From: Mobula birostris
Lineage: Eukaryota
Reading direction: 5' to 3'
Length of the DNA: 64,000 bases
Assembly (NCBI RefSeq): GCF_030028105.1
Contig: NC_092377.1
Location: 98,276,865-98,340,864, forward strand
The position numbers were made by a program, and so were the translations under genes. Position 1 is the first letter of the stretch. Every line of letters begins with the position of its first letter. Shown here in pieces: positions 6,291 to 57,192 of the stretch. The notes below the pieces were generated by a model. It worked only from the letters and a program-made list of their open reading frames with translations. It did not search any database and was not told where the DNA came from.

Positions 6291-6411
6291 TTTATGTTCC
6301 TTATGCCAATGGATCTCATAGATACAATAACACACAATTAATCTGGCATATTTGGGACTTTGGTGGTGCTCTATTGGCAGATTTTCCAGACTGTTAGAAT
6401 TTGTTTCCAGT

Positions 6412-8348
6412 ATAAGTATAACATAGCAAAGACGAGTGGGAAGCTGGAGGATTGGGAAATTTTTAAAGAGCAACAGAAGGTAAGTAAAAAGGCAATACGT
6501 GGAGAAAAAATGAGATACGAAGGTAAACTAGCCAAGAATATAAAGGAGGATAGTAAAAGCTTCTTTAGGTATGTGAAAAGGAAAAAAATAGTTAAGACCA
6601 AAATTGGGCCCTTGAAGACAGAAACGGGTGAATTTATTATGGGAAACAAGGAAATGGCAGACGAGTTGAACAGGTACTTTGGATCTGTCTTCACTAGGGA
6701 AGACACAAACAATCTCCCAGATATAATAGTGGCCAAAGGACCTAGGGTAATGGATGAATTGAAGGAAATTTATATTAGGCAGGAAATGATGTTGGATAGA
6801 CTGTTGGGTCTGAAGGCTGATAAGTCTCCGGGACCTGATGGTCTGCATCCCAGGGTACTTAAGGAGGTGGCTTTAGAAATCGTGGCCGCATTGGTAATCA
6901 TTTGCCAATGTTCTATAGATTCAGGATCAGTTCCTGTGGATTGGAGGGTGGCTAATGTTGTCCCTCTCTTCAAGAAGGGAGGAAGAGAGAAAACAGGGAA
7001 TTATAGACCGGTTAGCCTGATGTCGGTGGTGGGAAAGATGCTGGAGTCAATTATAAAAGATGAAATTACGACACATCTGGATAGCAGTAACAGGATCAGT
7101 CCGAGTCAGCATGGATCTACGAAGGGGAAATCGTGCTTGACTAATCTTCTGGAATTTTTTGAGGATGTAACTATGAAAATGGACAAGGGAGAGCCAGTGG
7201 ATGTAGTGTACCTGGACTTTCAGAAAGCCTTTGATAAAGTCCCACATAGGAGATTAGTGGGCAAAATTAGGGCACATGGTATTGGGCGGCAGAATACTGA
7301 CATGGATTGAAAATTGGCTGGCTGACAGAAAACAAAGAATAGCGATTAATGGGTCCCTTTCGGAATGGCAGGCGGTGACCAGTGGGGTACCGCAGGGTTC
7401 AGTGCTGGGACCGCAGCTGTTTACAATATACATTAATGATTTAGATGAGGGAATTAAAAGTAACATTAGCAAATTTGCCGATGACACAAAGCTGGGTGGC
7501 AGTGTGAAATGTGAGGAGGATGTTATGAGAATGCAGGGTGACTTGGACAGGCTGGGTGAGTGGGCAGATGCATGGCAGATGCAGCTTAATGTGGATAAAT
7601 GTGAGGTCATCCACTTTGGTGGTAAGAACAGGAAGGCAGATTATTATCTAAATGGAGTCAAGTTAGGAAAAGGGGAAGTTCAACGAGACCTAGGTGTTCT
7701 TGTACATCAGTCACTGAAAGCAAGCATGCAAGTACAGCAGGCTATGAAGAAAGCTAATGGCATGCTGGCTTTCATAACAAGGGGAATTGAGTATAAGAGC
7801 AAAGAGGTCCTTCTGCATCTGTACAGGGCCCTGGTGAGACCACACCTGGAGTATTGTGTGCAGCTTTGGTCTCCAAATTTGAGGAAGGACATTCTTGCTA
7901 TTGAGGGAGAGCAGTGTAGGTTCACAAGGTTAATTCCCAGGATGGCGGGACTGTCATATGTCGAAAGGTTGGAGTGACTGGGCTTATATACTCTGGAATT
8001 TAGAAGGCTGAGAGGGGATCTTATTGAAACATATAAGATTATTAAGGGATTGGACACGCTGGAGGCAGGAAGCATGTTCCCACTGATGGGTGAGTCCAGA
8101 ACCAGAGGCCACAGTTTAAGAATAAGGGGTAGGCCATTTAGAACGGAGTTGAGGAAAAACTTTTTCACCCAGAGAGTGGTGGATATATGGAATGCTCTGC
8201 CCCAGAAGGCTGTGGAGGCCAAGTCTCTGGATGCTTTCAAGAAAGAGATGGGTAGAGCTCTTAAAGATAGCGGAATCAGTGAATGGTGGTGCTGGCTTGA
8301 ATGGGCCGAATGGCCTACTCCTGCACCTATTGTCTATTGTCTATTGTC
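6412..8348 (+). mobile_element. Young 5'-truncated CR1 LINE, almost intact RT
   Basis: ORFs 6360-7310 and 7276-7977 carry SPGPDG, NYRPVSL, LDFQKAFD, GVPQGSVLGP and FADDTK. One frameshift at ~7287 and one stop at 7975. Tail (attgtct)n. Confidence 0.97.
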
Positions 8349-21845: not shown

Positions 21846-24800
21846 TAAGACCATAAGATATAGGAGCAGAAGTAGGCTATTTGGCCCATTGAGTCTGCTC
21901 GTCCATTCAATCATAGGCTGATCCAATTCTTCCAGTCATTTCCCACCCCACTGCCTTCTCCCCATACCCTTTGATGCCCTGGCTAATCAAGAACTTATCT
22001 GTCTCTGCCTTAAATGCACCCATTGGCTTGGCCTCCACAGCCGCTCATGGCGACACATTCCACAGATTTTCCACCCTCTGACTAAAGTAATTTCTCTGCA
22101 TCTCTGTTCTAAATGAACATCCTTCAATCCTGAATTTGTGCTCTCTTGTCCTAGACTCCCCTACCATGGGAAATAACTTTGCCATATCTAATCTGTTCAG
22201 GCCTTTTAACATTTGGAATGTTTCTATGAGATCCCCCCTCATTCTCCTGAACCCCAGAGAATACAGCCCAAGAGCTGCCAAACATTCCTCATATGGTAAC
22301 CCTTTCATTCCTGGAATCATTCTCATGAATCTTCTCTGAACCCTCTCCAATGTCAGTATATCCTTTCTAAAATAAGAAGCCCAAAGCTGCACACAATACT
22401 TAAGTGTGGTCTCGTGAGCGCCTTATAGAGCCTCAACATCACATCCCTGCTCTTATATTCTATACCTCTAGAAACGAATGCCAACATTGCATTCACCTTC
22501 TTCACCACCGATTCAGCCTGGAGGTTAACCTTTAGGGTTTGATGCACAAGGACTCCCAAATCTCTTTGCATCTCTGCATTTTGGATTCTCTCCCCATCTA
22601 AATAATAGTCTGCCTGTTTATTCCTTACACAAAAGCGCATGACCATATACTTTGCAACATTTTATTTCATTTGCCATTTCTTTGCCCATTCCTCTAAACT
22701 ATCTAAGTCTCTCTGCAGGCTCTCTGTTTCCTCAACACTACCCTATCCTCCACCTATCTTTGTAACATCAGCAAATTTAGCCACAAATCCATTAATCCCA
22801 TAGTCCAAATCAATGACCTACATTGCAAAAAGTAGCAGTCCCAACACCAACCCCTGTGGAACTCCACTGGTAACCGGCAGCCAGTCAGAATAGGATCCCT
22901 TTATTCCCACTCTCTTTTCTGCCAATCAGCCAATGCTCCACCCATGCTAGTAACTCCCCTGTAATTCCATGGGCTCTTATCTTGTTAAGCAGCCTCATAT
23001 GCAGCACCTTGTCAAAGGCCTTCTGAAAATCCAAGTACTGCATATCTGCATCTCCTTTGTAATTTCCTCAAAAAAATTGCAGTAGGTTAGTCAGGCAGGA
23101 TTTTCCTTTCAGGAAACCTTGCTGACTTTGGCCTATCTTGTCATGTGCCTCCAGGTATTCTGTAATCTCATCCCTAACAATCCATTCCAACAACTTCCCA
23201 ATCACTGATGTCAGGCTAACAGGTCTATAGTTTCCTTTCTGCTGCCTCACACCCTTCTTAGATAGCACAGTAACATTTGCAATTTTCCAGTCATCTGGTG
23301 CAATGCCAGAATCTATTGCTTCTTGAAAGGTCATTGTTAATGTCTCCACAATCTCTCCGAAGCTCTCTGAAGCTACTTCCTTCAGAACCAGAGGGTGAAT
23401 TTCATCAGGTCCAGGAGATTTATCCACCCTCAGACCATTAATCTTCCTGAGCACCTTCTCGGTCGTAATTTTCACTGCACATTCTTCACTTCCCTGACAC
23501 TCTTGAATGTCCGGTATACTGCAGATGTCTTCCATTGTGAAGACTGATGCAAAATACGCATTCAGTTCCTCTGCCATCTCTGCGTCTCTCATTACAATAC
23601 CTTCAGCGTCATTTTCTATTGGTTCTATATCTACCCTCAACTCCCTTTTACCCTTTATATACTTAAGCTTTTTGTATCTTCTTTGATATTAGTTGCCAGC
23701 CTCCTTTCGTAATTCATCTTTTCCTTCCTAATGACCTTTAGTTTCCTTTTGCAAGTTTTTAAAAGCTTCCTGATCCTCTATCTTCTCACTAGCTTTGGTT
23801 TCCTTGTATGCCTTCTCTTTTGCTTTTACTTTGGCTCTAACTTCACCTGTCAGCCACGGTAGTGTCTTTCTTCCATTCAAAAATTTCTTCTTATTTGGAA
23901 TATATCTGTCTTGCACTTCCTTCATTTTTCACAGAAACTCCAACCATTGCTGCTCTGCTGTCCTTCCTGCTAGAGTCCCTTTCCAGTCAACCTTGGCCAG
24001 TTCCCCTCTCATGCCATTGTAATTTCCTTTATTCCAATGAAATACCGACACATTGGACTTTAGTTTCTCCTTCTCAAATTTCAAAGTAAACTCGATCATA
24101 TTGTGATCACTGTTCCCTAAGGGTTCCTTAACCTTAAGCTCTCTTATCACCTCCGGATCATTGTACAACACTCAATCCAGCACAGCCAACCCCCTGGTGG
24201 GCTCAACAACAAGCTGTTATAAAAAGCCTTCCCTTAGATATTCTACAAATCCTCTCTCTTGAGGTCCAGTACTGGCCTGGTTTTCCCATTCCACTTTCAT
24301 GTTAAAATTCCCAACGATTACCATGACATTGCCCTTCTGACACGCCTTTTCTTTCTCCTGCTGTAATTTGTAATCCTCATCCTGCTCATATACAACTGCC
24401 ACTAGGGTCCTTTTACCCTTTCCATTTCTTAACTCAACCCGTAGAAACTCTACACGTTCTGATCCTATGTCATTCCTTTCTAATGATTTAATATTATTTC
24501 TTTTACATAGGGCCACACCACCCCCTCTGCCTATTAACTTATCTTTCCGATAGACTGTGTATCCTTGGACATTCAACTCCCAATGGCAGCCATCCTTTAG
24601 CCAAGTTTCAGAGATGGCCACAGCATCATACTTGCCAATCTGTAGCTGAATTTCAAGATCATCCATTTTATTTCTTATGCTGTGTGCATTCAAATACAAC
24701 ACTTTCAGTCCAGTATTTGTTGCTTTCTGTTTTAACTGCACCACACCTCTATTGCCTGTAACTCATCCCACTGGCTGTGATTATGTCTCATCTCCTGCCG

Positions 24801-25397
24801 GTCCTTTCTATCATCTCTGCTGTATGCTATCTTTGATTTATTTCTGTTTCGCCCTTCCTCAGCCCTATCACTCTGGTTCCCATTGCCCTGCCAAATTAGT
24901 TTAAACCCTTCCTAATGGCTCTAATAAACCTGCCTGCTAAGATATTGGACCACTTTGGGTTCAGGTGTAACCCGTCCTTTTTGTACAGGTCATATGTGCC
25001 CCCAGAAGATGCCCCAATGATCCAGGAACCAGAAGCCCTGCCGCCTTCACCAGTCTCTCAGCCACGCATTAATATGTCTGATCTTGCTATTCTTGCACTT
25101 GTTAGTATGTGGCACAAGCAGCAATCCCGAGATTACTACCCTAGAAGTCCTACTTTTCAGCTCCCTACCCAACTCCCTGAATTCTCTCTTCAGAACCTCC
25201 TCCCTTTTTCTACCTATGTCATTGGTACTAACGTGTTCTGAGACTTATGGCTCTTCACCTTCAGAATACTCTGTACCAGATCTGAGACATCCCATACCCT
25301 GGCATCCGGGAGGCAACACACCATGCGGGTATCTCTATCAGGCTGACAGAACCTCCTGTCTGTTCCTCTCACTATGGAATCCCCTATGACTACTGCT
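21846..25397 (-). mobile_element. CR1 LINE: 3' part of ORF1 (SGNH esterase) and a nearly complete, degraded ORF2
   Basis: AVVIGDS and CCLPDARV (ORF1); LKVLYLNAHSIRNK, ISETWL and SDH (APE endonuclease); SPGPDE and NYRPVSL (RT); CR1 tail 'ctcctatatcttatggtctta'. Confidence 0.95.
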
Positions 25398-25409
25398 TGT
25401 GAATGTGAT

Positions 25410-26700
25410 ATGAGAAACGAGCAGAATTAGGCCATTTAGCCCATTGGGTTTGCTCTGCCACACGATCATCTCTGTAACCTGTGATGCCTTCATAATAAAG
25501 AACCTCTGCTTTAAATATACCCAACACCTTGCCCACCATAGCTGTCTGTGGCAAATTCCATCGATTCACTCACATCTGGCTAAAGAAATTCCTCCTCATC
25601 TCTGTTCTAAAGGGATGCCCTTCTATTCTGACACTGTGCCTTCTGTCCTAGACTCTCCCACTATTTGAAACATCCTCTCTACATCCTGTCTATTTAGCCT
25701 TTTCAAAATTAGATAGGTTTCAATGAGACCCCTTCCCTGCCCCCATGTCATTTTTCTAAACTCCAATGAGTACAGGCCCAGAGCTATCAAACACTCCATG
25801 TACATTAACCCTTTTATTCCTGGGATCAATTTCGTGACCTCCTCTGCACCTTCTCCAATAAAATCACATACTTTCTTAGATATGGAAACCAAAACTGCTC
25901 ACAATACTCCAAATGTAGTCTGATCAATGCATTCAATCCCTTCCTTGATATTCTAGTCCTCTCAAAATGAATGCTAACATTGTATTTGCCTTCCTTATCA
26001 GTGGCTCAAACCTGCAAGTTATCCTTTAGGAAATCTTGCACAAGGACTTCCAAGTCCCTTTGCACCTCTAATTTTTGAATTTGCTCCCCATTTAACAGAT
26101 AGTCTACACTCTTATTCCTTCTACCAAAGTGCTTGCTCATTCACTGTTTTCTACTTGCCACTTCTGTCCAAGTCCTTCTGCAAACTCCTTGCTTCGTCAA
26201 TTCTATCAACCCCTCTACTTATCTTTGTATCATCTGTAAATGGCTGCAAAACCATAAATTCTATCATCCAGATCATTTTTCATATAATGTGAAAAGTAGT
26301 GGACCCAACACCAACCCCTACAGAACCCTACTAGTAACCGGCGGCCAACTAGAAAGGCTCCATTTATTCCCACTTTTCCCTTCTGACAGTCAGACTATCT
26401 TATTATCTTTCTCGTAATACAATGGGCTCTTTTCTTGTTTAGCAGCTGCATGTGCAATGCCTTCTGAAAATCTAAGTATACAACATCTACTGACTCCCCT
26501 TTGTCTATCATGTCTGTTATTTCCTCAAAGAATTCCAGCATATTTGTCAGGCAAGATTCCCCCCTTAAGGAAGTCATGCTGACTTAGGCCTATTTTATTA
26601 TGTGCCAAGTACCCTGAAACCTCATTCTAAATAATGGAGTCTTAACATCTTTCCAACCACTGAAGTCAGGCCTTTGTCATCCTCCTGATTTAAAGAGTGG
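25410..26700 (-). mobile_element. Older degraded CR1 RT to 3' end
   Basis: SCLTNMLEFFEE...YLDFQKA, LGLYSLEFR and VGESRT. Confidence 0.85.
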
Positions 26701-27004: not shown

Positions 27005-30000
27005 TGTTGTAATGTGAGCAAAGTCATTGGAGAGACACAGTTGGTAGATATAAAGTGGTCTTTTATTTGGGACACACACACAAACTGACAGCATTTGGAT
27101 TCACACAAGAGAGAGGCACCCTGATCCAACATTATAGCATATTTTTATATGTTAAGGAACAAAGGTGGCAGGACAATTTCTGTAGTTACAATGTCTTCAT
27201 AATGCTTCCTTGGAGTTAAATGTAGTTTTCAAATTCCTGGGCTTTCCCACCAACATACCCAAAATGAGTATTAATCAGTGAGTTAGACTGGCGGGAAGGA
27301 TTTAAGAGAAGAGCGTTTCAGCGAGTTAGACCGGTGGGAAGGACTTAAAAGAAGAGGTTTTCAGCGAGTTAGACCGGTGGGAAGGACTTAAAAGAAGATA
27401 GCTTTTTCCTCAGCAGTTTGATTGAGGCACGACTGCACAAGCGCGTAGATGTCAACAAGTTAGAATGGCGGGAAGGATTTAAAAGAAGACAGCTTTATAG
27501 AGTGGGCGAATAAGTAGGAAGGCTTTGGTTCAACAGGGCTTCGGCGATAACAGGTCGAGGCGAGGTAAGCTACTTGTGAGGAATAGGAAGTATGTCTGTG
27601 AGGCTGGTGTTCTGTACTGGGTGTCAGACGTGGGATGTCCGGAAGATATCTTAGCCTCCCGGACGGCCACATCTGCGCCAGGTGCATCAAGCTGCAGCTC
27701 CTTAGGGACCGGGTTAGGGAACTGGAGATGCAGCTCGATGACCTTTGTCTGGTCAGGGAAAGTGAGGTGATAGAGAGGAGCTACAAGGAAGTAGTCATAC
27801 TGGGGCCTTGGGAGACAGATAAGTGGGTAACAGTAGGAGGAGGAAGGGAAAGAGTCAGATACTAGAGAGTACCCCTGTGGCTGTACCCCTGAACAATAAG
27901 TAGTCCTGTTTGAGTACTGTTGGGGTGGGCAAACAACCTACCTGGGGGAAGCAACAGACTCTGGCACAGAGCCTGGCCCTGTGGCTCAGAAGGGTAGGGA
28001 AAGGAAGAGGATGGCAGCAATGATAGGGGACTCTGTAGCTGGGGGGTGAGACAGGCGATTGTGTGGATGCAGGAAAGAAACATGGGTGATAGTTTGCCTC
28101 CCAGATGCCAGGGTCTGGGATGTTTCTGATCACATCCACGGCATCCTGAAGTGGGAAGGTGAACAGCCAGAGGTTCTGGTTCATATTGGTACCAATGACC
28201 TAGGTAGGAAAAGGGAGGAGGTCCTGAAAGCAAACTACAGGTAGTTAGGAAAGAAGCTGAGAAGCAGGACCTCAAAGTTAGTAATCTCGGTTTGCCTGTG
28301 CCATGTGACAGTGAGTATAGGAATAGAGTGAAAGGGAGGATAAATGTGTGGCTGGGGATTGGATCGGGGGCAGAGATTCAGATTTCTGGATCATTGGGAC
28401 TTTTTTTGCGGCAGGCGTGATGTGTACAAAAAGGATGGGTTTCACTTGAATCTGAGGGGGACCATTATCTTGACAGGGAGGTTTGCTAAGGCTATTGGGG
28501 AGAGTTTAAACTAGAACTTCTGGGGTTGGGAACCGAACTGAAGAGACGGAGGAAGGGGCGGTTGGCTCACAAATTGAGAAAGCTTGTAGGCAGTGTGAGA
28601 GAGAGAATAGGCACATGATAGAGAAGGGATGCGCTCAGATTGATGGTTTGAAATGTATCTATTTTAATGCAAGAAGCCTCATGAACAAAGTGGATGAGTT
28701 CAGAGCGTGGATCAGTACTTGGAGCTATGATGTTGTGGCCATTACAGAGACTTGGATGGCTCAAGGGCAGGAATGGTTACTTAGAGTGCCAGGCTTTAGA
28801 TGTTTCAAAAAGGACAGGGAGGGAGGCAAAAGAGGTGGGGACATGGTACTGCTGATCAGAGATAGTGTCACGGCTGCAGAAAAGGAGGAAGTCATGGAGG
28901 GATTGTCTACTGAGTCTCTGTGGGTGGAAGTTAAGAACAGGAAGGGGTCAATAACTCGACTGGGTGTTTTTTATAGCCCTCCCAATAGTAACAGGGACAT
29001 CAAGAAGCACATAGGGAGACAGATTCTGGAAAGGTGTAATAATAACAGGATTGTTGTGGTGGGAGATTTTAACTTCCCAAATATTGATTGGCATCTTCCT
29101 AGAACAAGGGGTTTAGATAGGGTGGAGTTTGTTAGGTGTGTTCAGGAAGGTTTCCTGACACAATATGTAGAGAAGCCTACAAGAGGAGAGGCTGTACTTG
29201 ATATGGTATTGGGAAATGAACCTGGTCAGGTATCAGGTCTCTCAGTGGGAGAGCATTCTGGGGATAGTGATCACAAGTCTATCTCCTTTACAATAGTATT
29301 GGAGAGGGATAGGAACAGACAAGTTAGGAAAGTGTTTAACTGGAGTAAGGGAAAATATGAAGCTATCAGGCAGGAACTTAGAAACATAAATTGGGAACAA
29401 ATGTTCTCAAGGAAATGTATTGCATGTTCAGGGGATATTTGCGTGACGTTCTGCATAGGTGCATTCCGATGAAACAGGGAAAGGATGGTAGGATACAGGA
29501 ACCGTGGTGTACAAAGGCTGTTGTAAATCTTGTCAAGAAGAAAAGAAAAGCTTACGAAAGGTTCAAAAAACTAGGTAATGATAGAGATCTAGAAAATTAT
29601 AAGGCTGGCAGGAGGGAGCATAAGAATGAAATTAGGAGAGCCAGAAGGGACTATGAGAAGGCCTTGGCAGACAGGATTAAGGAAAAGCCCAAGGCATTCT
29701 ATAAGTATGTGAAGAGCAAGAGGATAAGACATGAGAGAATAGAACCAATCAAGTGCGACAATGGAAAAGTGAGTATAGAACCAGAGGAGATAGCAGAGGT
29801 ACTGAATACTTTGCTTCAGTGTTCACTATGGTGAAGGACCCTGGCGATTGGCGATTGTAGGGATGACTTACAGAGGACTGAAAAGCTTGAGCTTATAGAC
29901 ATTAAGAAAGAGGATGTGCCGGAGCTTTTAGAAAGCATCAAGTTGGATACGTCACCGGGACCAGACGAGATATACCCCAGGCTACTGTGGGAGGTGAGGA

Positions 30001-33440: not shown

Positions 33441-33814
33441 GTGCCTGTGAAAAGATTTAACACAGTCTCTAAATTCAAAGCAAACTACAAGTCTTCCTAA
33501 AGCTTTTCCTAAATTAATCGGAGATGTTATTCCTGTATAATTGTAATATTCACAGTTACAAAGATTGGAAAGAAATTGCTAAGCTCTCTTGAAACATAGG
33601 GTCTGCTTAAAAATGGTCCAGTATGACATTTATCTATAAAAAGAACTTTGAAAATGGGGAGGTCCATCTTGCTAGTTGTTTGGATCAGATTTCTGTCATG
33701 CCATTCTTTGTAAGCTCAACAACCGGTCAAGTTGCACACTGACAAAAAAAAACTTGTGCTCTGTTGTTTAATTCTTCACATCTCCCACTTAACTGTTTAT
33801 TTTTCCCTTTTCTT

Positions 33815-34810
33815 GCACCCTGTAGACCTCCTGTACCAATTGCACTCTGTACACCCCCTGTATCAATTGACCTCTGTACTGCAATTGGTGCAAGGGGTGT
33901 ACAAGGGTGCAATTGGTCTAGAGGGTGTACAGAATGCAATTGATGCCGGGGATATACAGGATGCAATTGGTGCAGGGGGTGTATAGAATGCAATATTTGC
34001 AGGGGGAGTATAGAATGGAGTTGGTGCAGGGAGTGTATAGAATACAATATGTGCAGGGGGTGTATAGAATGCAGTATGTGCAGGGGGTGTACAGGATGCA
34101 ATTGGTGCAGGCGGTGTATAGAATGCAATATGTGCAGGGGAGTATAGAATGAAGTTGGTGCAGGGGGTGTATAGGATGCAATATGTGCAGGGGGAGTATA
34201 GAATGCAGTTGGTGCAGGGGGTGTATAGAATGCAATATGTGCATGGGGTGTATAGAATGCAATATGTGCAGGTGGAGTATAGAATGCAGTGGTGCAGGGG
34301 AAGTATAGAATGCAATATGTGCAGGGGGAGTATAGAATGCAGTTGGAGCAGGGGGTGTATAGAATGCAATATGTGCAGGGGGAGTATAGAATGCAGTTGG
34401 TGCAGGGGGTGTATAGAATGCAATATGTGCAGGGGAGGTATAGAATGCAGTTGATGCAGGGGGTGTATAGAATGCAATATGTGCAGGGGGTGTATAGAAT
34501 GCAATATGTGCAGGGGGAGTATAGAATGCAGTTGGTGCAAGGGGAGTATGGAATGCAATTGCTGCAGGGGGTGTACAGAGTGTAATTGGTGCAGGGTGTG
34601 TACAGAGTGTAACTGGTGCAGGATGTGTACAGCATGTAATTGGTGCAGGGGGGTACAGAGTTCTTTTGGTGCGGGGGTGTGCAGAGTGCAATTGGTGCAG
34701 GGGGTGTACAGAGTGCAATTGGTGCTGCAGGGGGTGTACAGAGTGTAATTGGTGCAGGTGATGTACAGAATGCAATTGGTGCTGCAGCCTGAGGGTGTAC
34801 ACCCCTGCAA
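33815..34810. repeat. 27 bp minisatellite, ~34 units, with inverted units at the left end
   Basis: Unit gcagggggWgtatagaatgca(atatgt|gttggt). This period explains the 9-aa periodic ORFs on both strands. Confidence 0.95.
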
Positions 34811-35699
34811 CAACATGTTTTCCTGATGTTGCCAACAGCTGTTTATGGCACTGTTTCTTATTCTATTTCCTTATGCATTCTCGTACAATTTGGATTTGCT
34901 GCTCTGTCTCTTTCTGTTAGTTCCCAGTTTGCCACTTGAACACAATCTGTTACAGGTGAATCACAAATGTTAAACAGGCATTTTCAATGCTTCCAGACTT
35001 TTTTTTAAATGAGAGACGCACATATTTGAGCAACAAAACTCACTATAGGTGGTCAGTGTAGAAATTAATCATTTTTGCAGGAAGATGTTATATTACAACA
35101 AAAGACCTGTCGAAAAAAATGAATTATTCCACCTGCTCACAGTACGATACTGAACTGTTTCATATTTGCAGTTCATTTAGTAATAAATTATTCTACATTT
35201 AGAGTAAATCACAGTTGATTCAAAATTTATCCACATTTACTGTCTACTCTCCAGTAATTAATTATCCATATTTACAATAATGTCATGAACGATAATGAAT
35301 TATTTGATATAAATTGACTACAAGACTGTAATAGAAGAAACCTACTTTAATGGATTGTTTACCAATTCCAATATCAGAAAATAATTGCAGAATACAAATA
35401 TAAATTTCCTTTTAAGATATCTTTAATCAGTTTGGTTGCAGTTTATGGAATTTTAAATCTCTTTATCTTTTTCCTTTCTTTCACATTCAGTTTCCTCTGT
35501 GTGTTCCATTTGGATTAATTTCCCTATCTTCTGGGTTGTTCTCCCTTGCTCATCTTCCTGCACCCTCCCCGCCCATCCTTCACCTATATTTTCCCTGCTT
35601 CATCTTCTCCTTTTTGTTTGTCCTTCTCCCTCTCCTTGTCTTGTTTTTCTCCACCCTTCTACACTTTCCTTTCTCCTCTGGCTTCAATTTGTTTTGTTT

Positions 35700-37227: not shown

Positions 37228-37990
37228 ATCTGCAGCTTAGACAAACTTCCTCATTATCCACAATACCATCAACTTTCATATTGTTAGCAATCCCTCCTAT
37301 GTTCACATTGAAGTTTTTGATGTGTGTCATATATATCAAAGGTTGCAGCATAAATCCCTGTGGTACACCACTGATCAGTAAAGTGTCCTTCCACCACTGC
37401 CGTCTGTCTTCTGCCTTCAGCTTTGGATCCAACTTTCCAAATTGCCATGGATCCCATGTGTCTTAACCTTCTGAACCAGGCTACCATGTGGGACATTGCC
37501 AAATCCTATTCTAAAATCTATATAGACACCGTCAACCACATCACCTTCATTGATCTCCTTTGTTACCTTCTCATCTCCATTAAGTTAGTGAGACAGTCTT
37601 TTCCCTTCACAAAACCATGCTAACTATTCCTAAATAGCTCCTGCCTTTTCAGATGGATGTTAAGCTTGTCCCTTAGAATCTTCCCAAGATATTTCCCTAC
37701 CACTAATCTAAGGCTCACCAGGTTGCAGTTACCTGGTTTATCTCTGCTACTCTTTCAAAAGGAACACCATTAGCAATCTTCTAATTTTCTAATGAAGATG
37801 CAGAAATCTCTGAAAGAATCTTATTCACATTATCTCACTTCAGACATAGATTACCCCTTTGGTCACTAAGGAGACCTATTCTTCCCTGGCTGCTTCTTGC
37901 CCCTAACATATTTATCAAATGATGAGGGATTCTCCTAAATCTTACCAGCTAAGTATATTCCATGCCCTCTTTCTACCCTCCAAGTCCCCT
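37228..37990 (-). mobile_element. Old degraded CR1 RT fragment
   Basis: SGVPQG..LQPL and the reverse complement of HGFVKGK. Confidence 0.75.
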
Positions 37991-37997
37991 TCGTCAA

Positions 37998-39512
37998 TAC
38001 ATAGAAACATAGAAAATAGGTGCAGGAGTAGGCCATTCGGCCTTTCGAGCCTGCACCGCCATTTATTATGATCATGGCTGATCATCCAACTCAGAACCCC
38101 GCCCCAGCCTTCCCTCCATACCCCCACAAGGGCCATATCTAACTCCCTCTTAAATATAGCCAATGAACTGGCCTCAACTGTTTCCTGTGGCAGAGAATTC
38201 CACAGATTCACCACTCTCTGTGTGAAGAAGTTTTTCCTAATCTCAGTCCTAAAAGGCTTCCCCTCTATCCTCAAACTGTGGCCCTTCGTTCTGGACTTCC
38301 CCAACATCGGGAACAATCTTCCTGCATCTAGCCTGTCCAATCCCTTTAGGATCTTATACGTTTCAATCAGATCCCCCCTCAATCTTCTAAATTCCAACGA
38401 GTACAAGCCCAGTTCATCCATTCTTTCTTCATATGAAAGTCCTGCCATCCCAGGAATCAATCTGGTGAACCTTCTCTGTACTCCCTCTATGGCAATGATG
38501 TCTTTCCTCAGATTAGGGGACCAAAACTGCACACAATACTCCAGGTGCGGTCTCACCAAGGCCTTGTACAACTGCAGTAGTACCTCCCTGCTCCTGTACT
38601 CGAATCCTCTCGCTATAAATGCCAGCATACCATTCGCCTTTTTCACCGCCTACTGTACCTGCATGCCCACTTTCAATGACTGGTGTATAATGACACCCAG
38701 GTCTCGTTGCACCTCCCCTTTTCCTAATCAGCCACCATTCAGATAATAATCTGTTTTCCTATTTTTGCCACCAAAGTGGATAACTTCACATTTATCCACA
38801 TTAAATTGCATCTGCCATGAATTTGCCCACTCACCCAACCTATCCAAGTCACCCTGCATCCTCTTAGCATCCTCCTCACAGCTAACACTGCCGCCCAGCT
38901 TCGTGTCATCCGCAAACTTGGAGATGCTGCATTTAATTCCCTCATCCAAGTCATTAATATATATTGTAAACAATTGAGGTCCCAGCACTGAGCCTTGCGG
39001 TACCCCACTAGTCACCGCCTGCCATTCTGAAAAGGTCCCGTTTATTCCCACTCTTTGCTTCCTGTCTGCTAACCAACTCTCCACCCACACCAATACCTTA
39101 CCCCCAATACCGTGTGCTTTAAGTTTGCACATTAATCTCCTGTGTGGGACCTTGTCAAAAGCCTTTTGAAAATCCAAATATACCACATCCACTGGTTCTC
39201 CCCTATCCACTCTACTAGTTACATCCTCAAAAAATTCTATGAGATTCGTCAGACATGATTTTCCTTTCACAGATCCATGCTGACTTTGTCCGATCATTTC
39301 ACCGCTTTCCAAATGTGCTGTTATCACATCCTTGATAACTGACTCCAGCAGTTTCCCCACCACCGACGTTAGGCTAACTGGTCTATAATTCCCCGGTTTC
39401 TCTCTCCCTCCTTTTTTAAAAAGTGGGGTTACATTAGCCACCCTCCAATCCTCAGGAACTAGTCCAGAATCTAACGAGTTTTGAAAAATTATCACTAATG
39501 CATCCACTATTT
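37998..39512 (-). mobile_element. Young 5'-truncated CR1 LINE
   Basis: 259 aa and 234 aa ORFs with all RT motifs (FADDTK), broken by in-frame stops near 38728 and 38650. Tail (ctatgttt)n. Confidence 0.97.
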
Positions 39513-42514: not shown

Positions 42515-43411
42515 CTTTCTTTTCAAATCTTTTTATTGTTATATTATACAAAAGAAATAACACAAGTACATCGAAGTAACAACACTTACAATGTCTCAAA
42601 GAAAAAAAAAATTATCTTAAAGACTGAAAAAAAATTTGTGATAATAAAAGAAAAACCCTACTAAGCAGAAAAAGCGAGTGGAAAAAAAACCATTAGGTGT
42701 ACAACCCCAGAGCCATGTGTCACACAAAAAGCTTCTAAAAATAAACATCAAACTGCCAGCGAGAAAGAAAAATATACCAAAAAATTTACAATTAGATCAT
42801 GGAGAAAATCTATCAATTAGCTCAAATGATAATAAAGAGCAAATGAGCCCCATCTTTTCTCAAAATCAAATAAAGGTTCAAAGGTTCGACTTCTAATTTT
42901 CTCCAAACTAAGCCATAGCATCACTTGAGAGAACCATTGTGACAAAGTGGGAGCTGATGTATCCTTCCACTTCAACAAAATGGCCCTCCTAGCTATCAAC
43001 GCAACAAATGCAATAACATGTTGGTCAGACACAGAAATACCATGAATATTTTGAGGAATTATTCCAAAAAGCACAGTTAATTTATTAGGTTGTAGATTAA
43101 TTTTAATTGCATTAGAATTTGTTGAAAAAACTGACTTCCAGAACTGTTCCAATATAGAATAAGACCAAAACATATGTGTCAGTGCAGCTATCTCAGTTTT
43201 ACATCTATCACAATAACTATCAACATTAGAAAATATTTTAGAAAGTCTCTCCTTTGTAAAATGGTAATGATGTACAATTTTAAATTGAATCAGTGAATGA
43301 CTAGCATAAATTGAAGAAGAGTTAACCAACTTCAAAATCCGCGTCCAATCCTCCATCATAAAAGTCAAATTGAGTTCTTTTTCCCAATCCTGTTTAATCT
43401 TAGATAAAGGA
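42515..43411 (-). mobile_element. L1-clade LINE 3' end (ORF2 C-terminal zinc-binding domain)
   Basis: WEKELN, IQFKIVH, CDRC...LTHMFW.Y. AATAAA plus an A-rich tail. 10 bp TSD agcccgagat (42505-42514) / agcccaagat (43412-43421). Confidence 0.92.
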
Positions 43412-43699
43412 AGCCCAAGATTCACTGGGGGTTATTTTATGGCAGCTTAGTACAGTCTCACTGATACAGGTTGGAGGTACATCTATATCCAAGCAGGGCT
43501 TATCTCCAACTACTCTCAATGATCAGAGCCCTTTGGATGAGCAGACTGTCCAGTGGAATGAAAGGCTTATCTCTTGCAGCATTCACTTTTAGTACTTCCT
43601 TCACAGACTGGCATACTTGGTAAGGAGGCAGCATGTTCAATCACATTAGCTTCTATGGGCCCAACCAAAGGTGTTACTGTCCTTTTAAAATGTACTTTA

Positions 43700-53084: not shown

Positions 53085-55480
53085 GTCATAGAGTCATAGA
53101 GCACTATACAGAGACATAGCCCTTTGGCCCATCTAGTCCATGCTGAACTGCTGTTCTACCTAATCCCATTTGGACTATAGCCCTCCCTGCCCCTCCCACC
53201 CATGTACCTATCCAAATTTCTCTTAAGTGTTGGAATCAAACCTGCATCCGCCACTTCCACTGGCAGCTCATTCCACAATCTCGAAATCCTCTGAGTGAAG
53301 AAGTTCTCCCTCATGTTCACCCTTAACCTGTCACCTCTAGTTCTAGTCTCACCCAAACTTAGTGGAAAATTGCATTTGCCCTATTGATACCCTCATAATT
53401 TTGTATACCTCTATCAAATCTCCCCTCATACTCCTACACTCCATGGAATAAAGTGCTAACCTGTTCAACCTTTTCCTACAGCTGAGGTCCTGAAATCCTG
53501 GCAAAATCCTTCTAAATTTTCTCTGTACTCTTTCAAACTTATTGATAGCTTCTGTGTAGGTAGGTGAACAGTGCTGCACACAAAACTCTAAATTAGGCCT
53601 ACCAATGCCTTATAAGCTTCAACATAGCATCCCAATTCCTCTACTCAGTACTTTGATTCATGAAAGCCGAAGTGCCATAAGCTCTCTTTACGATTTTATC
53701 TACCTGTGATGCCATTTTCAATGAATGATGGATCTAAACTCCCTCTGTTCTACTACACTCCTCAATGCCCTACCATTCACTGCATAAGTCCTATCCTCCC
53801 ATGATGCAACTGTCACACTTGTCTGCATTAAATTCCATTTGCCTTTCCTCAGCCCATTTTTCCAGCTGCAAGCTTTGATAGCTTTCCTTGCTGTCCACTA
53901 TGCCCACAATCTTGGTGTCATCCATAAATCTGCTGATCCAGTTTACCACATTATCATCCATATCATTGATATAGACGACAAATGACAATGGACTCAGTAC
54001 CAATCCCTGAGGCACACCACTAGTCACAGGCCTTCAGTCAGAGAGGCAACCATCTACTACTACTCTCTGGCTTTTCCTGCAAGCCCAACATCAAATCCAG
54101 TTTACAATCTCATCCTGAATGTCAAGAGACTAAACACCTTGACCAACCTCCTATGCAGGTCTCTGCTACAGGCCCTGCTAAAGTCCATGTAGACCACTTC
54201 CACTGCCTTTCCTTCATCAACCCTCTCGGTCATCTCGTCGAAAAACATGAGGTATTTTATACACAACCTCCCATGCACAAAGTCATATTGACTATCCCTG
54301 ATCAGGTCCTATCTACCCAAATACTTATATATCCGGTCCCTTAGAATACCTTGCAGTAATTTACCCACTACTGACATCAGGCTGACTGGTCTATAAATTT
54401 CCTGGCTTTTTCTTAGAGCATTTCTGGAACAATGGAACAACATTAGCTATCCAGCACCCATGGTTACGGATGTTTAAGTTTCTCTGCTATGGCTCCTGCA
54501 ATTTCTGCACTAACCTCCCACAAGGTTCAAGGGACACCTTGTCAGGCCTTGGAGATTGATCTACACTAATTTGCTATAAGACAGCAAGCAGCTCCTCCTC
54601 TGTAATTGTATACAGTCCACAACCTCACTGCTGTTGTGCCTCCATTCAATGGACTCTGTATCTATCACCTGAGTAAATACAGATGTAAAAATTCCACTAG
54701 ATTTTACCATCTGTTCCGGCTCCATGCAAAGGTAATCATACTGATCTTCAAGCGGACCAGTCTTGTCCCTTGTTATCCATTTGCACTTAATAGATCTGTA
54801 GAAGCCCTTGGGATTGTCATTCACCTTGTCAGCCAGAGCAGCCTAACTACTTTTAGCCCTCCTAATTTCCCTCTTAAATGGTCTCTTGCATTTCTTTTAC
54901 TTCTTAAGTACCTCATTTTTTCCTTGCGGCCTGTACCTGCTATGTACACCCTTTCTACTTCTTCTTAACCAGGACCTCAATATCCCTTGAAAACCAATGT
55001 TAGTCTTTCCTTTTATTCTGACAGCAACATACAAATTCTGTACTCTCAGTGTTTCACTTTTGAAGGCCTCCCACTTACCAAGCATCCGTTTGTCACAAAA
55101 CAACCTATCCCAAGTGACACTTTCCAGATCCTTTCTGATGCCATCAAAACTGGCCATTCTCCAATTTAGAATCTCAGTTTGAGGACCAGACCAATCCTCT
55201 CCATAACCATCTTGAAATTAATGGAATTACGATCACCTGATCCAAAGTGTTCCCCTTCACGCACTTCCATCACTTGCATTCTCATTGCCCAAGAGACGAT
55301 CCAGTATCACACCCTCTCGAGTTGGAACCTCTGTATATTGATGCAAAAATCCATTTAAGGTTTCCCCATCTCTCTGGCTCCATGCTGTCTTTGAATGTAG
55401 GCTTAACCCCATCTTTCCTCACAACCATCCACTATCTGCGCTGGCACTCTGGTTCCCACTCCCCTACAACTCTATAGGTC
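53085..55480 (-). mobile_element. Degraded CR1 ORF2 to 3' end
   Basis: TSGVPQGLVLSP, FMDDTK, FFTQR, NPKGFY and tail (ctatgact)n. Confidence 0.88.
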
Positions 55481-55821
55481 CACCAGTTCTCACATCTGGC
55501 AATGAGTTGTCCCACATGGGTTGTATTTAATTATGTTAACCTGCTACACTGCTTGTCTTCACTAGTAGCTCTAATTTAAATCTCACTCCCACTTCACCTC
55601 CGGAATTCAGCCTTGTAGTCTATGCACAGACGTGTGTGGAATGAGGTGTGGAGCCAAATGTTCCAGGCAAACTACAAACTGGGCATCGATGACCAGATTA
55701 TTGATACATAAATGCCAATAGATAGCATTGTCAGTGTCATTTTCCAACACTCTACTGATGATTGAGAGTATAAGGTTCGTCCATCGTCATCGATGAAGAC
55801 CTGGACACCATTAGTACTTCT

Positions 55822-55957
55822 AGTGAGGTTGAGTTGCTAGCTCGACACTCAACCCGGCACGGATGGAAAACGTGCCCGGGAGCGGCGCGACTGGATTCGA
55901 ACTGGGGAACCTTCGCTCCTGGAGTCCAGCGCTGATATTACTGCGCCACCAGCCGGC
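55822..55957 (-). mobile_element. tRNA-derived cassette / short SINE inside the ribozyme-headed element
   Basis: A-box-like TGGCGCAGTAA and B-box GTTCGAATCC, followed by the hairpin gttgagt-gtcgagctagca-actcaac. Confidence 0.7.
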
Positions 55958-56285
55958 TATCTTTTTGATGGTGTCGAAACTAGTGCTTGATTTGGATTTA
56001 AGGGAGAGTTGCACAGCGTCAGCCTCACTCTCTCTTCCCAATTCCCATCTGGATCCAGTGGCAAGACAAGAGTTGAGACAGCTGGAGATGGGACTAGGTG
56101 CAGTGGATGACCAGGACGTCTTCTGTGTCTTGTCCTGCTGTACACATTCTACGACGCTTGCAGAGACCGGCTTCTTGACCGTTAGACCTTCCATTAGTCT
56201 TGTCCGCTCAATCCACCGGAGTCTCTCTTCACGTGCTGGGGTAGACATCCCTCTATCTCACTGAAGGTTTGAGACCCATCGGCTA

Positions 56286-56470
56286 CCCTCACCTGGTTTA
56301 GCCGGCTTGTCGAAGCCGTTGCCCGGGGTGTGGCCGCTGTCGCATGCTAACAGCTACCAGGAGCCACAGGTGAGAGCTGAGTGCCAGGTGGGGACCAAAG
56401 GTGGACAAACCGCCTTGAAAAGGATGTGACATGTTCCCCCACCAGAGATGCTACCCCTCCCTGACACCCC
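56286..56470 (-). ncRNA. HDV-like (nested double pseudoknot) ribozyme candidate
   Basis: P1 GGGGTGT/ACACCCC; P2 CTCTCACCTG/CAGGTGAGGG; P3 GGC/GCC; L3 starts TCC; then GG-GCAA; P4 CGGCTT/AAGCCG; J4/2 GCTAA. Confidence 0.75.
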
Positions 56471-56896
56471 ATACACTCCTGATTGACAGTAGATTGATAA
56501 GGAACTAATTGGCAGGGTTGGATTTGTCCTGCTTTGCTGTGAACAGGTGATATAGGGCAATTTTCCTCACTGTCTGGTGGATTCCAATGTCCTATAAGAT
56601 CCGGAGCAGCTTGACTCGAGTCAGGGCTACTTTTGGAGTGCATGTCTTCAGTTCCACAGCTATGCTATTGTTTATTCTGCTACTCCTTGCTGCATCCAGT
56701 TCTGTAACCTTTCCTTGCTGTTACGTGGCGTGAATCGAATTGATTATTATGATGGGGAATATATCAGGCAAAGGGCCAGACAGATGGTGAACTCAGTTCT
56801 TTTGGTTGAAGGTTTTGCGAATATTTCAGCCTTGTCTATAGCACTAGTATGCTGGGCCCTGCTGTTGTTGAAGATGAGGGTTCCCTTGGATCCTAC

Positions 56897-57192
56897 GGCA
56901 TGGTAGCGTAGTGATTAGCGTGATGCTATTACAGTGGCGGTGATCACCAACCAGGGTTCAATTCCTGCAGTTATCCGTGAGGAGTTTGTACTGCATGCTC
57001 AGGTTTTTTCCTGCATTCCAAAGATATACAGTTAGGGTTAATGAATTGTGGGTTTGCCATGTTGAAGCTGGAAATGTGGTAACACTCGTGGGCTGCCTGG
57101 CACTATCCTTGCTGATTTGATTTGACTTAAATGACATATTTGACTCTATGTCTATGTTTTGCTGTACATGTGAGAAATAAAACTAAACTTTT
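56897..57192 (+). mobile_element. V-SINE with Rex-like tail
   Basis: Head 'ggcatggtagcgtagtgattagcg...gggttcaattcc' and tail 'gtacatgtgagaaataaaact'. Confidence 0.75.

What the first reader, a model, noticed from the sequence alone, without database searches (positions are those of the whole stretch)
55771..56479. Non-autonomous retroelement headed by a complete HDV-like ribozyme with an extra L3 hairpin
Seen (minus strand): P1 GGGGTGT (56470-56464) pairs with ACACCCC (56331-56325). P2 CTCTCACCTG pairs with CAGGTGAGGG. P3 is GGC/GCC. L3 opens TCCTGGTA, so its CC can form P1.1 with the GG after P1. Then come GCAA, P4 CGGCTT-cgac-AAGCCG and J4/2 G-C-T-A-A, with the C75-equivalent at 56301. This matches the HDV order GG-GCAA-P4-GCGAA. 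The predicted cut site lies only 9 nt inside a 12 bp TSD, so it almost defines the element's 5' end. Unusual points: a 5 bp hairpin (GCTGT/ACAGC) inserted at the end of L3, a ~90 nt J1/2 holding a second CACCTGG that could compete for P2, and no coding capacity. Established: R2, RTE and L1Tc elements use 5' HDV-like ribozymes to cut themselves out of read-through transcripts. Inference: a promoter-independent SINE-like family released by self-cleavage and mobilised by an RTE LINE.
Basis: partly seen in the sequence, partly recalled or inferred. Interest (0 to 1): 0.85.

Follow-up and report, generated by a model that had tools for sequence, protein, structure and literature searches.

The report
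Ribozyme-headed short retroelement in a ray
This is one copy of a very abundant short jumping element of ray genomes whose front end has all the parts of a hepatitis-delta-type self-cutting RNA, a known arrangement that here carries an unusual extra hairpin in the catalytic loop and has not been shown to cut.

Summary
A generic HDV descriptor finds this one site in the window and none in 400 simulated windows. Contigs of three ray species show that 55771-56479 is a highly repeated family with sharp edges. The insertion is shared by two species and absent from a third, an empty site. It is therefore a real retroelement with an HDV-like head.

Three corrections follow. The cut site is thus either the element's first base, 56479 (P1 6 of 7 pairs here), or 56470. 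Second, the "~90 nt J1/2" is one stable hairpin, z -3.18, that contains the supposed P2 competitor. It resembles the P1.2 domain of large mosquito HDV-like ribozymes. Third, about 150 nt (55816-55965) is an extra SINE-like module that other copies lack.

Rfam gives only a sub-threshold match.

This scan had already flagged the same family on other DNA of this genome. Verdict: a new structural variant of a known kind, of moderate interest.

The parts
55771..56479 (-). Whole element copy, 709 nt, 5' end at 56479
   Evidence: Contig depth jumps from about 8-20 to 1e4-3e5 at both edges in X1, X5 and X9 (table 2). Paralog records stop at 56476, 56476, 56480 and 55769 (table 8). The flanking direct repeat abuts both ends.
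56480..56491 (.). Target-site duplication, copy at the 5' side
   Evidence: 11 of 12 identical to 55759-55770 (D1). The chance is about 3e-4 given the edges.
55759..55770 (.). Target-site duplication, copy at the 3' side
   Evidence: As above. The empty-site contig of organism C joins 55759 to 56492 (table 8, record 25). Only 6 nt of the repeat can be placed there.
56473..56479 (-). Terminal candidate P1 5' strand; the cut would lie before 56479, the element's first base
   Evidence: Pairs 6 of 7 with 56331-56325, with A56477 opposite C56327. Duplex energy is -5.5 kcal/mol. It is compatible with the full J1/2 hairpin.
56464..56470 (-).
   Evidence: 7 of 7 pairs with 56331-56325, -11.8 kcal/mol. 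Six of its bases are also the base of the J1/2 hairpin.
56379..56469 (-). J1/2 peripheral hairpin (P1.2-like), 31 pairs
   Evidence: Folded alone, 56472-56377 gives -44.5 kcal/mol, z -3.18. 1 of 200 shuffles folds as well, and the MFE structure holds 41% of the ensemble.
56367..56376 (-). P2 5' strand
   Evidence: 10 pairs with 56295-56286, -15.8 kcal/mol. It is also formed in the pseudoknot-free MFE.
56363..56365 (-). P3 5' strand (GGC)
   Evidence: 3 pairs with 56334-56332.
56335..56362 (-). L3, 28 nt. It opens TCCTGG, holds the hairpin 56354-56336, and ends in G
   Evidence: The hairpin alone is -5.4 kcal/mol. The CC at 56361-56360 can pair with the GG at 56324-56323 to form P1.1.
56332..56334 (-). 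P3 3' strand (GCC)
56325..56331 (-). P1 3' strand (ACACCCC)
56319..56324 (-). J1/4 GGGCAA, including the P1.1 GG
   Evidence: It is aligned to the consensus of Rfam RF02682 in the sub-threshold match.
56303..56318 (-). P4 stem-loop, 6 pairs with a 4-nt loop
56296..56302 (-). J4/2 GCTAAAC, with the candidate catalytic C at 56301
   Evidence: GGCUAA is also the consensus of RF02682 at this place.
56286..56295 (-). P2 3' strand
55966..56285 (-). Non-coding middle section shared with the family
   Evidence: Depth is 1e5-2.6e5 at 55972-56195, with a dip to about 6e3 at 56196-56251. Short ORFs of other copies match it. No Pfam family.
55816..55965 (-). Extra SINE-like module with a tRNA-T-arm-looking motif, absent from other copies of the family
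   Evidence: Contigs in all 3 species join about 55797-55819 directly to about 55964-55968 (tables 5 and 5c). Depth drops to 1.4e4 at 55916-55971. Over 150 contigs per run share 55825-55869 but differ beyond it (table 7). No tRNA by ARAGORN or Rfam.
55771..55815 (-). 3' tail of the element, with no poly-A
   Evidence: bin 55748-55803 has depth about 1e4, and a paralog record stops at 55769.

Best explanation
Window 56479..55771, minus strand, is one dead copy of a very abundant non-autonomous non-LTR retroelement of myliobatiform rays.

Its first ~195 nt form a large HDV-like ribozyme with these parts:
- P1.
- A long closed J1/2 hairpin (P1.2-like).
- An extended 10-bp P2.
- P3.
- An L3 that keeps the U-C-C...G core but carries a 19-nt hairpin.
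- P1.1 and P4.
- A J4/2 with the catalytic C at 56301.

Inferred mechanism. The element has no promoter of its own and is transcribed as part of longer host transcripts. The head folds during transcription and cuts the RNA at or next to the element's first base. The freed RNA is then copied into new sites by a LINE's reverse transcriptase, which recognises the short 3' tail.

That uses the terminal P1 strand 56479-56473 and leaves the hairpin intact. In this copy that P1 has an A-C mismatch.

Shown here: the fold on paper, its rarity by chance, the repeat family, its edges, the target-site duplication and the empty site.

Inferred: cleavage, the cut site, read-through transcription and the LINE partner.
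For: - All helices are present.
- My descriptor finds 1 site in the window and 0 in 400 simulated windows.
- The fold sits at the 5' edge of a repeat family present in 3 of 3 ray DNA runs laid (table 2).
- Organism B shares the insertion: its flank contigs run 27 and 25 nt into the element (records 18 and 24). Organism C has an empty site (record 25).
- The TSD is 11 of 12.
- The 5' edge lies at 56476-56480 in 3 of 3 listed paralog records. In the diverged copy P0029, BLASTP similarity starts at 56478.
- The J1/2 hairpin has z -3.18.
- Large natural HDV-like ribozymes with a structured J1/2 domain and a 12-bp P2 cleave fast (PMC4908430, part 1 read).
- P1 and P1' lie 23 to over 700 nt apart in R2 ribozymes (PMC3774820, section 18).
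- Of the 40 of 174 difference rows shown, the 4 in the head, where this copy departs from the family majority, all fall in unpaired places.
- The head differs from the majority at 4 of 200 places and the middle at 19 of 308, Fisher p 0.029.
- The sub-threshold Rfam match to RF02682 aligns GGCAAC-P4-GGCUAA.
- Contigs of a run guessed to be RNA cover the head (records 12-16).
Against: - No Rfam HDV family reaches its threshold. There were 0 matches at gathering over 64 kb and none at E<=10 over 1.2 kb. The only match is 13.2 bits against a gathering score of 44, E 3.6, on 221 nt.
- L3 is 28 nt. The descriptor quoted in PMC6326823 has 7 nt.
- The position that descriptor fixes as C23 is G here, and R53 is U.
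- The terminal P1 has an A-C mismatch. A also stands at that place in P0029 (Lys against Glu codon), so the mismatch may be ancestral.
- An alternative local hairpin, 56359-56331 at -11.6 kcal/mol, would consume P3' and part of P1'.
- No covariation could be tested, because no DNA of other copies could be fetched.
- 134 of the 174 difference rows were not shown.
- The empty-site contig lacks 11 nt of the 12-nt repeat.
- The run called RNA is only a guess, and contigs cannot show RNA ends.
Confidence: 0.5

Rival explanations
1. The ribozyme uses the perfect P1 at 56470-56464 and cuts before 56470. The 9 nt upstream are a leader that is removed. Copies that keep it descend from uncleaved RNAs, or from RNAs started by an internal promoter at the element's first base, as in L1Tc.
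For: - This P1 is 7 of 7 at -11.8 kcal/mol, against 6 of 7 at -5.5 for the terminal strand.
- At the four bases of this P1 that the amino acids of P0029 fix, pairing with its own P1' is kept. The terminal strand of that copy would pair at only 4 of 7. This is a by-eye reading, on one decayed copy.
- L1Tc combines an internal promoter and an HDV-like ribozyme in its first 77 nt (PMC3383444, abstract seen in the listing).
Against: - An RNA cut at 56470 cannot pass on 56471-56479, yet these bases are shared by paralogs and by P0029.
- This P1 must open 6 pairs of a hairpin worth 13.3 kcal/mol, from -44.5 to -31.2.
- No promoter was tested.
Confidence: 0.28
2. The head descends from an HDV-like ribozyme but no longer cleaves. 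The hairpin in L3 and the G at the usually conserved C of L3 have disabled it. It is kept as a structured 5' end for another reason, such as binding of the LINE protein, RNA stability or translation-like functions.
For: - L3 departs from the quoted descriptor in length and at one fixed base.
- No Rfam family reaches threshold.
- The review PMC6765202 (passages) says that the R2 protein binds a pseudoknot within the ribozyme region, and that HDV-like ribozymes may promote translation.
Against: - The catalytic C, the P1.1 partners, the U...G spacing in L3 and the A-A of J4/2 are all kept. That would not be expected for a mere scaffold.
- The fold sits at the 5' end, where cleavage is useful.
- The family reached a very high copy number with this head.
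Confidence: 0.18
3. A chance look-alike. The helices are accidental complementarities in a G+C-rich repeat and have nothing to do with HDV-type ribozymes.
For: - The whole-head MFE is not exceptional: z -1.82, with 14 of 200 shuffles folding as well.
- My descriptor was written after seeing the site.
- Two database scans with core 21-22-mers found only chance matches in bacterial DNA.
Against: - 0 of 400 simulated windows hold a match, even with P2 of at least 6 and P4 of at least 4.
- The site lies within 0-9 nt of an independently defined element 5' end.
- The J1/4-P4-J4/2 string aligns to an Rfam HDV-type consensus.
Confidence: 0.04

Closest known systems
R2 SIDEs (short internally deleted elements of Drosophila R2)
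   Same: Non-autonomous derivatives that keep only the 5' HDV-like ribozyme and the 3' sequences recognised by the LINE protein (PMC3774820, introduction passage; PMC3414825, abstract in the listing).
   Different: SIDEs insert only in 28S rRNA genes and are few. This family is dispersed, with variable flanks, and very abundant. Its LINE parent was not identified here. L3 carries a hairpin.
drz-Agam-2 large HDV-like ribozymes of Anopheles
   Same: A structured J1/2 domain (P1.2) joined by short linkers, plus an extended P2. Together these 'pinch' P1 and P2 and speed cleavage (PMC4908430, part 1). Here the hairpin has 91 nt, the linkers would be 3 and 2 nt if the terminal P1 is used, and P2 has 10 bp.
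   Different: No sequence similarity was tested. No Rfam drz-Agam match appeared. The L3 hairpin is not described in the part of the paper that I read.
L1Tc / NARTc (and SIDER) of trypanosomatids
   Same: A dispersed LINE and its non-autonomous version both start with an HDV-like ribozyme that frees the RNA from co-transcripts (abstracts of PMC3383444 and PMC4035085).
   Different: L1TcRz is a minimal 77-nt ribozyme that doubles as a promoter. The hosts are protists. Here the head is about 195 nt, in a vertebrate.
RTE and Baggins LINEs with 5' HDV-like ribozymes (Ruminski et al. 2011)
   Same: Promoter-less LINEs processed from read-through transcripts by a 5' HDV-like ribozyme, as told in the review PMC6765202 (passages) and in the discussion of PMC3774820.
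   Different: The primary paper is not held, so I could not compare structures. RTE parentage of this element was not tested here. It is claimed only by earlier unchecked notes of this scan.
Rfam RF02682 (HDV ribozyme from F. prausnitzii)
   Same: The J1/4-P4-J4/2 string GGCAAC...GGCUAA aligns to the model consensus.
   Different: 13.2 bits against a gathering score of 44, E 3.6. Only the 3' half aligns. This is not a member by Rfam's rule.

Membership tests
HDV-like self-cleaving ribozymes | Nested double pseudoknot in the order P1-J1/2-P2-P3-L3-P3'-P1'-P1.1-P4-J4/2-P2' | tested here: met
   All helices are present in that order. My own descriptor gives 1 hit in the window and 0 in 400 simulations.
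HDV-like self-cleaving ribozymes | P1 of 6-7 bp whose first base is G paired with a pyrimidine (G1-Y35 in the descriptor quoted in PMC6326823) | tested here: met
   56470-56464 gives 7 of 7 pairs with G1-C. The terminal alternative 56479-56473 gives 6 of 7 pairs with G1-C (descriptor passages).
HDV-like self-cleaving ribozymes | P1.1: two C of L3 pair with two G after P1' | tested here: met
   CC at 56361-56360 and GG at 56324-56323. This is complementarity in the sequence only.
HDV-like self-cleaving ribozymes | L3 core U19...C23 G24, with U and G spaced for the reverse wobble, in a loop of about 7 nt | tested here: not met
   U and G are present at the right spacing (U-C-C-U-G-G). However, G stands at the place of C23, and L3 is 28 nt with a 19-nt hairpin. 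PMC3774820, section 16, notes one active R2 ribozyme with deviant L3 spacing.
HDV-like self-cleaving ribozymes | Catalytic C in J4/2, in the context C-R-R-A | tested here: inconclusive
   The C at 56301 is followed by U-A-A, so R53 is U. The Rfam RF02682 consensus also reads GGCUAA at this place.
HDV-like self-cleaving ribozymes | Match to a curated covariance model (Rfam HDV-type families) at the gathering score | tested here: not met
   0 matches at gathering. The best match is RF02682 at 13.2 bits against 44. Rfam models hold no pseudoknots, and the two long inserts are penalised.
HDV-like self-cleaving ribozymes | Helices supported by compensatory changes across relatives | not testable with these tools
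The collection scans found only chance hits.
HDV-like self-cleaving ribozymes | Site-specific, Mg2+-dependent self-cleavage that depends on the catalytic C | not testable with these tools
   This is a bench assay.
Non-autonomous non-LTR retroelement (SIDE/SINE-like) | Dispersed multi-copy family with defined ends and differing flanks | tested here: met
   Depth is 1e4-3e5 inside against 8-20 outside in X1, X5 and X9. Paralog records leave the stretch at 56476-56480 and at 55769 and run on into unlike sequence.
Non-autonomous non-LTR retroelement (SIDE/SINE-like) | Target-site duplication and an empty site in a relative | tested here: met
   The repeat is 11 of 12. The contig of organism C joins 55759 to 56492 (record 25). 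Caveat: only 6 nt of the repeat can be placed in that contig.
Non-autonomous non-LTR retroelement (SIDE/SINE-like) | No reverse transcriptase or endonuclease of its own | tested here: met
   The longest ORF, 142 aa, has no Pfam family. phmmer found only 6 short ORFs of other copies and 3 spurious bacterial repeat proteins.
Non-autonomous non-LTR retroelement (SIDE/SINE-like) | 5' head and/or 3' tail shared with an autonomous LINE (here claimed: RTE) | not tested
   None of the LINE pieces in the window resembles the element. Full-length ray LINE loci could not be fetched.

The most novel reading that the evidence does not exclude
The master copies of this family are active HDV-type ribozymes that tolerate, or need, a stem-loop inserted in the catalytic loop L3, together with a P1.2-type clamp. 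That would be a structural class of HDV-like ribozyme not described in the papers I could search. With contig depth 1e4-1e5 times that of the flanks, it may also be the most abundant self-cleaving ribozyme family known in a vertebrate genome. It would have been active recently enough to give insertions that differ between ray species.
Probability: 0.35. Interest if true: 0.6.

Novelty: new variant of a known kind. Interest (0 to 1): 0.42.

Why it matters
HDV-like ribozymes at the 5' ends of LINEs and of their deletion derivatives are established for R2 and its SIDEs, L1Tc and NARTc, RTE and Baggins.

What this case would add, if the head cleaves:
- A vertebrate family of very high copy number.
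- A hairpin tolerated inside L3, the loop that builds the active site.
- A natural second example of the P1.2 'pinch' architecture.

It also gives a clean test of how the cut site relates to the inherited 5' end, because two P1 strands lie 9 nt apart. Insertions that differ between species, shared by organisms A and B and absent from C, could serve as markers for ray phylogeny.

If the head is inactive, this is an ordinary abundant short retroelement.

Tried and rejected
- Rfam over the whole window at gathering found nothing. At E<=10 on 1.2 kb it found only a chance miRNA match. On 221 nt it found a sub-threshold RF02682 match.
- The tRNA reading of 55880-55960 has no support from ARAGORN or Rfam. 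I call this piece SINE-like only because of the depth, the joints and a T-arm-looking motif seen by eye.
- There is no second copy in the window (blastn, word size 7).
- Protein route to other copies. The head's open frame gave no candidates. The 142-aa ORF gave none at E<=0.001 among 24 candidates. phmmer against the representatives gave 9 hits. Six are short ORFs of other copies with no source names. Three are long bacterial repeat proteins, which I dropped as spurious after Pfam.
- P0029 reads through a diverged head. I used it only for where the similarity begins. It is too decayed to test pairing: it has a 10-nt loss in L3 and a changed J1/4, both read by eye.
- Collection scans with core strings returned one bacterial contig each. 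They were alike over 22 and 25 nt only, so these are chance matches.
- Other P1 partners for the 5' terminal bases were enumerated. Only 56479, 56471 and 56470 pair with the strand that precedes GGGCAA.
- I considered reading the L3 hairpin as P3. I rejected it because it leaves 12 and 4 unpaired nt around P3 and no CC for P1.1.
- Papers. Ruminski 2011 and Webb 2009 are not held. Supplements are closed, so Figure S2 of PMC3774820 and the descriptor tables of the primary papers could not be seen. They may show L3 variants.
- That an L3 hairpin is not in print rests only on the listings. That ray or shark HDV-like ribozymes are not in print rests (2 papers, both off the subject by title).
Full report
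WHAT IS THERE.

- P1: 56470-56464 with 56331-56325, 7 of 7.
- P2: 56376-56367 with 56295-56286, 10 pairs, one of them G-U.
- P3: GGC/GCC.
- A 5-bp hairpin, 56354-56350 with 56340-56336, inside L3.
- P4: 6 pairs.
- J1/4 GGGCAA and J4/2 GCTAAAC, with the C at 56301.

L3 opens U-C-C-U-G-G. So the two C can pair with the GG after P1' to form P1.1. The U and the second G stand at the spacing of the reverse-wobble pair in the descriptor quoted in PMC6326823 (passages).

IS IT MORE THAN CHANCE?

I wrote a generic HDV descriptor with liberal lengths: J1/2 up to 100 nt, L3 7-30 nt, P2 at least 6 bp and P4 at least 4 bp. It hits one site on both strands of the window, which is this one. It hits none in 400 simulated 64-kb sequences. 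The descriptor was written after seeing the site, so the figure is generous.

The position of the site is an independent point in its favour. It lies within 0-9 nt of an element end that other data define.

Rfam does not recognise the site:
- 0 matches at gathering.
- Nothing of the HDV type at E<=10 on 1.2 kb.
- On 221 nt, only RF02682 at 13.2 bits against a gathering score of 44, E 3.6.

That weak alignment does show that GGCAAC-P4-GGCUAA is also the consensus of a curated HDV-type family. So U after the catalytic C is within known variation.

IT IS A MOBILE REPEAT.

No second copy lies in the window. I therefore laid contigs of four public runs on 55300-56950 at 80% likeness.
- In the three DNA runs (organisms A, B and C), summed contig depth is about 8-20 in the flanks and 1e4-3e5 from about 55771 to about 56476.
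- Organism A's contigs match the flanks without a difference.
- Organism B's flank contigs, about 1.6% different, run 27 and 25 nt into the element. B therefore shares the insertion.
- One 757-nt contig of organism C, 5-7% different, lies on 55429-55759 and then directly on 56492-56917. This is an empty site.

The element is flanked by a 12-nt direct repeat, 11 of 12 identical. The chance of that is about 3e-4 once the edges are known to +-5 nt.

One thing does not fit. The empty-site contig has room for only 6 nt (GATTGA) of the repeat. Either organism C has an 11-nt indel at a short tandem repeat, and its flank does carry 30 gap letters in 331 nt, or the true duplication is shorter.

THE 5' END AND THE CUT SITE.

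- The 3 listed paralog records that reach this edge stop at 56476, 56476 and 56480 and then run on into unlike sequence (table 8).
- P0029 is an ORF from an unnamed assembly that reads through a diverged copy. It is alike from the codon at 56478 onward and not before.
- The direct repeat abuts 56479.

An RNA cut at 56470 could not hand down 56471-56479.

Enumeration of all partners shows a second P1 strand at 56479-56473. It pairs 6 of 7 with the same P1', with A56477 opposite C.

The 96 nt between it and P2 fold alone into one long hairpin:
- Energy -44.5 kcal/mol and z -3.18.
- 1 of 200 shuffles folds as well.
- The MFE structure holds 41% of the ensemble.

Its 3' arm holds the 'competing' CACCTGG.

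Adding the helices:
- Terminal P1 plus the full hairpin: -50.0 kcal/mol.

With the terminal P1 the linkers are 3 and 2 nt and P2 has 10 bp. This is the layout that Webb et al. found to speed cleavage in large mosquito HDV-like ribozymes: a P1.2 domain, short linkers and an extended P2 (PMC4908430, part 1).

Against the terminal site:
- It has the mismatch.
- P0029 also has A at that place, so the mismatch may be old.

PMC3774820 (section 18) describes how duplicated P1 strands shift R2 cleavage sites. It also reports P1-P1' distances of 23 to over 700 nt, so neither feature is foreign to the family.

FAMILY-LEVEL HINTS OF CONSTRAINT (WEAK).

One search showed 40 of its 174 difference rows. Of those 40, 29 lie in the element and mark places where this copy departs from the family majority.
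- 4 of 200 positions differ in the head, against 19 of 308 in the middle (Fisher p 0.029).
- All 4 in the head fall in unpaired places: the L3-hairpin loop, and an internal loop and the apical loop of the J1/2 hairpin.
- Two of the four are CpG decay.
- 134 rows were not shown.

I treat this as suggestive only.

ANATOMY OF THE REST.

The element is a mosaic. Contigs in all three species join about 55797-55819 directly to about 55964-55968 (tables 5 and 5c). Depth falls to 1.4e4 at 55916-55971. So other copies lack about 150 nt, 55816-55965.

That piece has a T-arm-looking motif. Its 3' part, 55825-55869, is shared with over 150 contigs per run that continue differently and often end in poly-A (table 7). 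I read it as an extra SINE-like module. ARAGORN and Rfam see no tRNA there.

Without it the element would be about 560 nt. That matches the 555-564 nt that earlier notes of this scan give for other copies.

Over 200 contigs per DNA run share 56252-56403 but have another 5' part (loose end at 56403). Many low-depth joints delete different stretches between head and middle. So several deletion forms exist.

The 142-aa ORF has no Pfam family. It matches only short ORFs of other copies.

THE LINE PARTNER.

The partner was not tested.
- The window holds LINE pieces: RT at 6360-7977 and 37942-39507, and endonuclease at 28615-29472. None resembles the element.
- The endonuclease piece has its best relatives in Hypanus sabinus and Mobula hypostoma. 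This places the window in a myliobatiform ray.
- The RTE label therefore rests only on unchecked earlier notes.

EXPRESSION.

A run guessed to be RNA (X16) has contigs on the head and none on the flanks. Contigs cannot show RNA ends, and the run may hold DNA.

COMPARISON WITH WHAT IS KNOWN.

The arrangement is that of R2 SIDEs and of NARTc: a 5' HDV-like ribozyme plus a LINE 3' tail, with no ORF. Reviews state that RTE and Baggins LINEs and some SINEs use HDV-like ribozymes.

What is unusual:
- The hairpin in L3.
- The G at the usually fixed C of L3.
- The copy number in a vertebrate.

My searches for an L3 insertion and for elasmobranch HDV-like ribozymes found no report. I saw listings only, and the two primary surveys are not held.

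VERDICT.

- This is a new structural variant of a known kind.
- Activity and cut site remain open.
- The same family had already been noted many times by this scan.

Noticed in passing
window 6360-7977 (+), 28615-29472 (+), 37942-39507 (-), 42817-43425 (-): Decayed LINE pieces: RVT_1, Exo_endo_phos and zf-RVT by Pfam. The endonuclease ORF is 74% identical to an uncharacterised protein of Hypanus sabinus and 60% identical to one of Mobula hypostoma. None shares sequence with the ribozyme-headed element.
   Followed up: partly
window 55412-55523 and 56868-56950: Two further short, highly repeated stretches in the flanks of the element. Depth is up to 2.9e4 and 1.6e3, against about 10 around them (table 2). 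They are unrelated to the element.
   Followed up: no
window 56252-56403 (-): More than 200 contigs per DNA run share this part of the head but diverge upstream of 56403 into another, mutually similar 5' sequence (table 7). This is a sister subfamily or the parent LINE, with a different P1 and J1/2 region.
   Followed up: no
window 55825-55869 (-): This tail piece is shared with an abundant SINE whose copies carry a different tRNA-T-arm-like stretch upstream and end in poly-A (table 7).
   Followed up: partly
window 33727-34835 (-): Three overlapping ORFs of about 300 aa lie in different frames of one strand. Two were scanned and have no Pfam family. This looks like a compositionally odd or repetitive stretch.
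   Followed up: no
window 22001-26000 and 28001-30000: Strong G/C strand skew, -0.35 and +0.39. The second stretch coincides with the LINE endonuclease piece.
   Followed up: no
L001 10865-10886; L002 2674-2698: Bacterial contigs that share 22 and 25 nt with the ribozyme core by chance. Both lie in what looks like coding sequence, and there is no HDV-like fold around them.
   Followed up: yes
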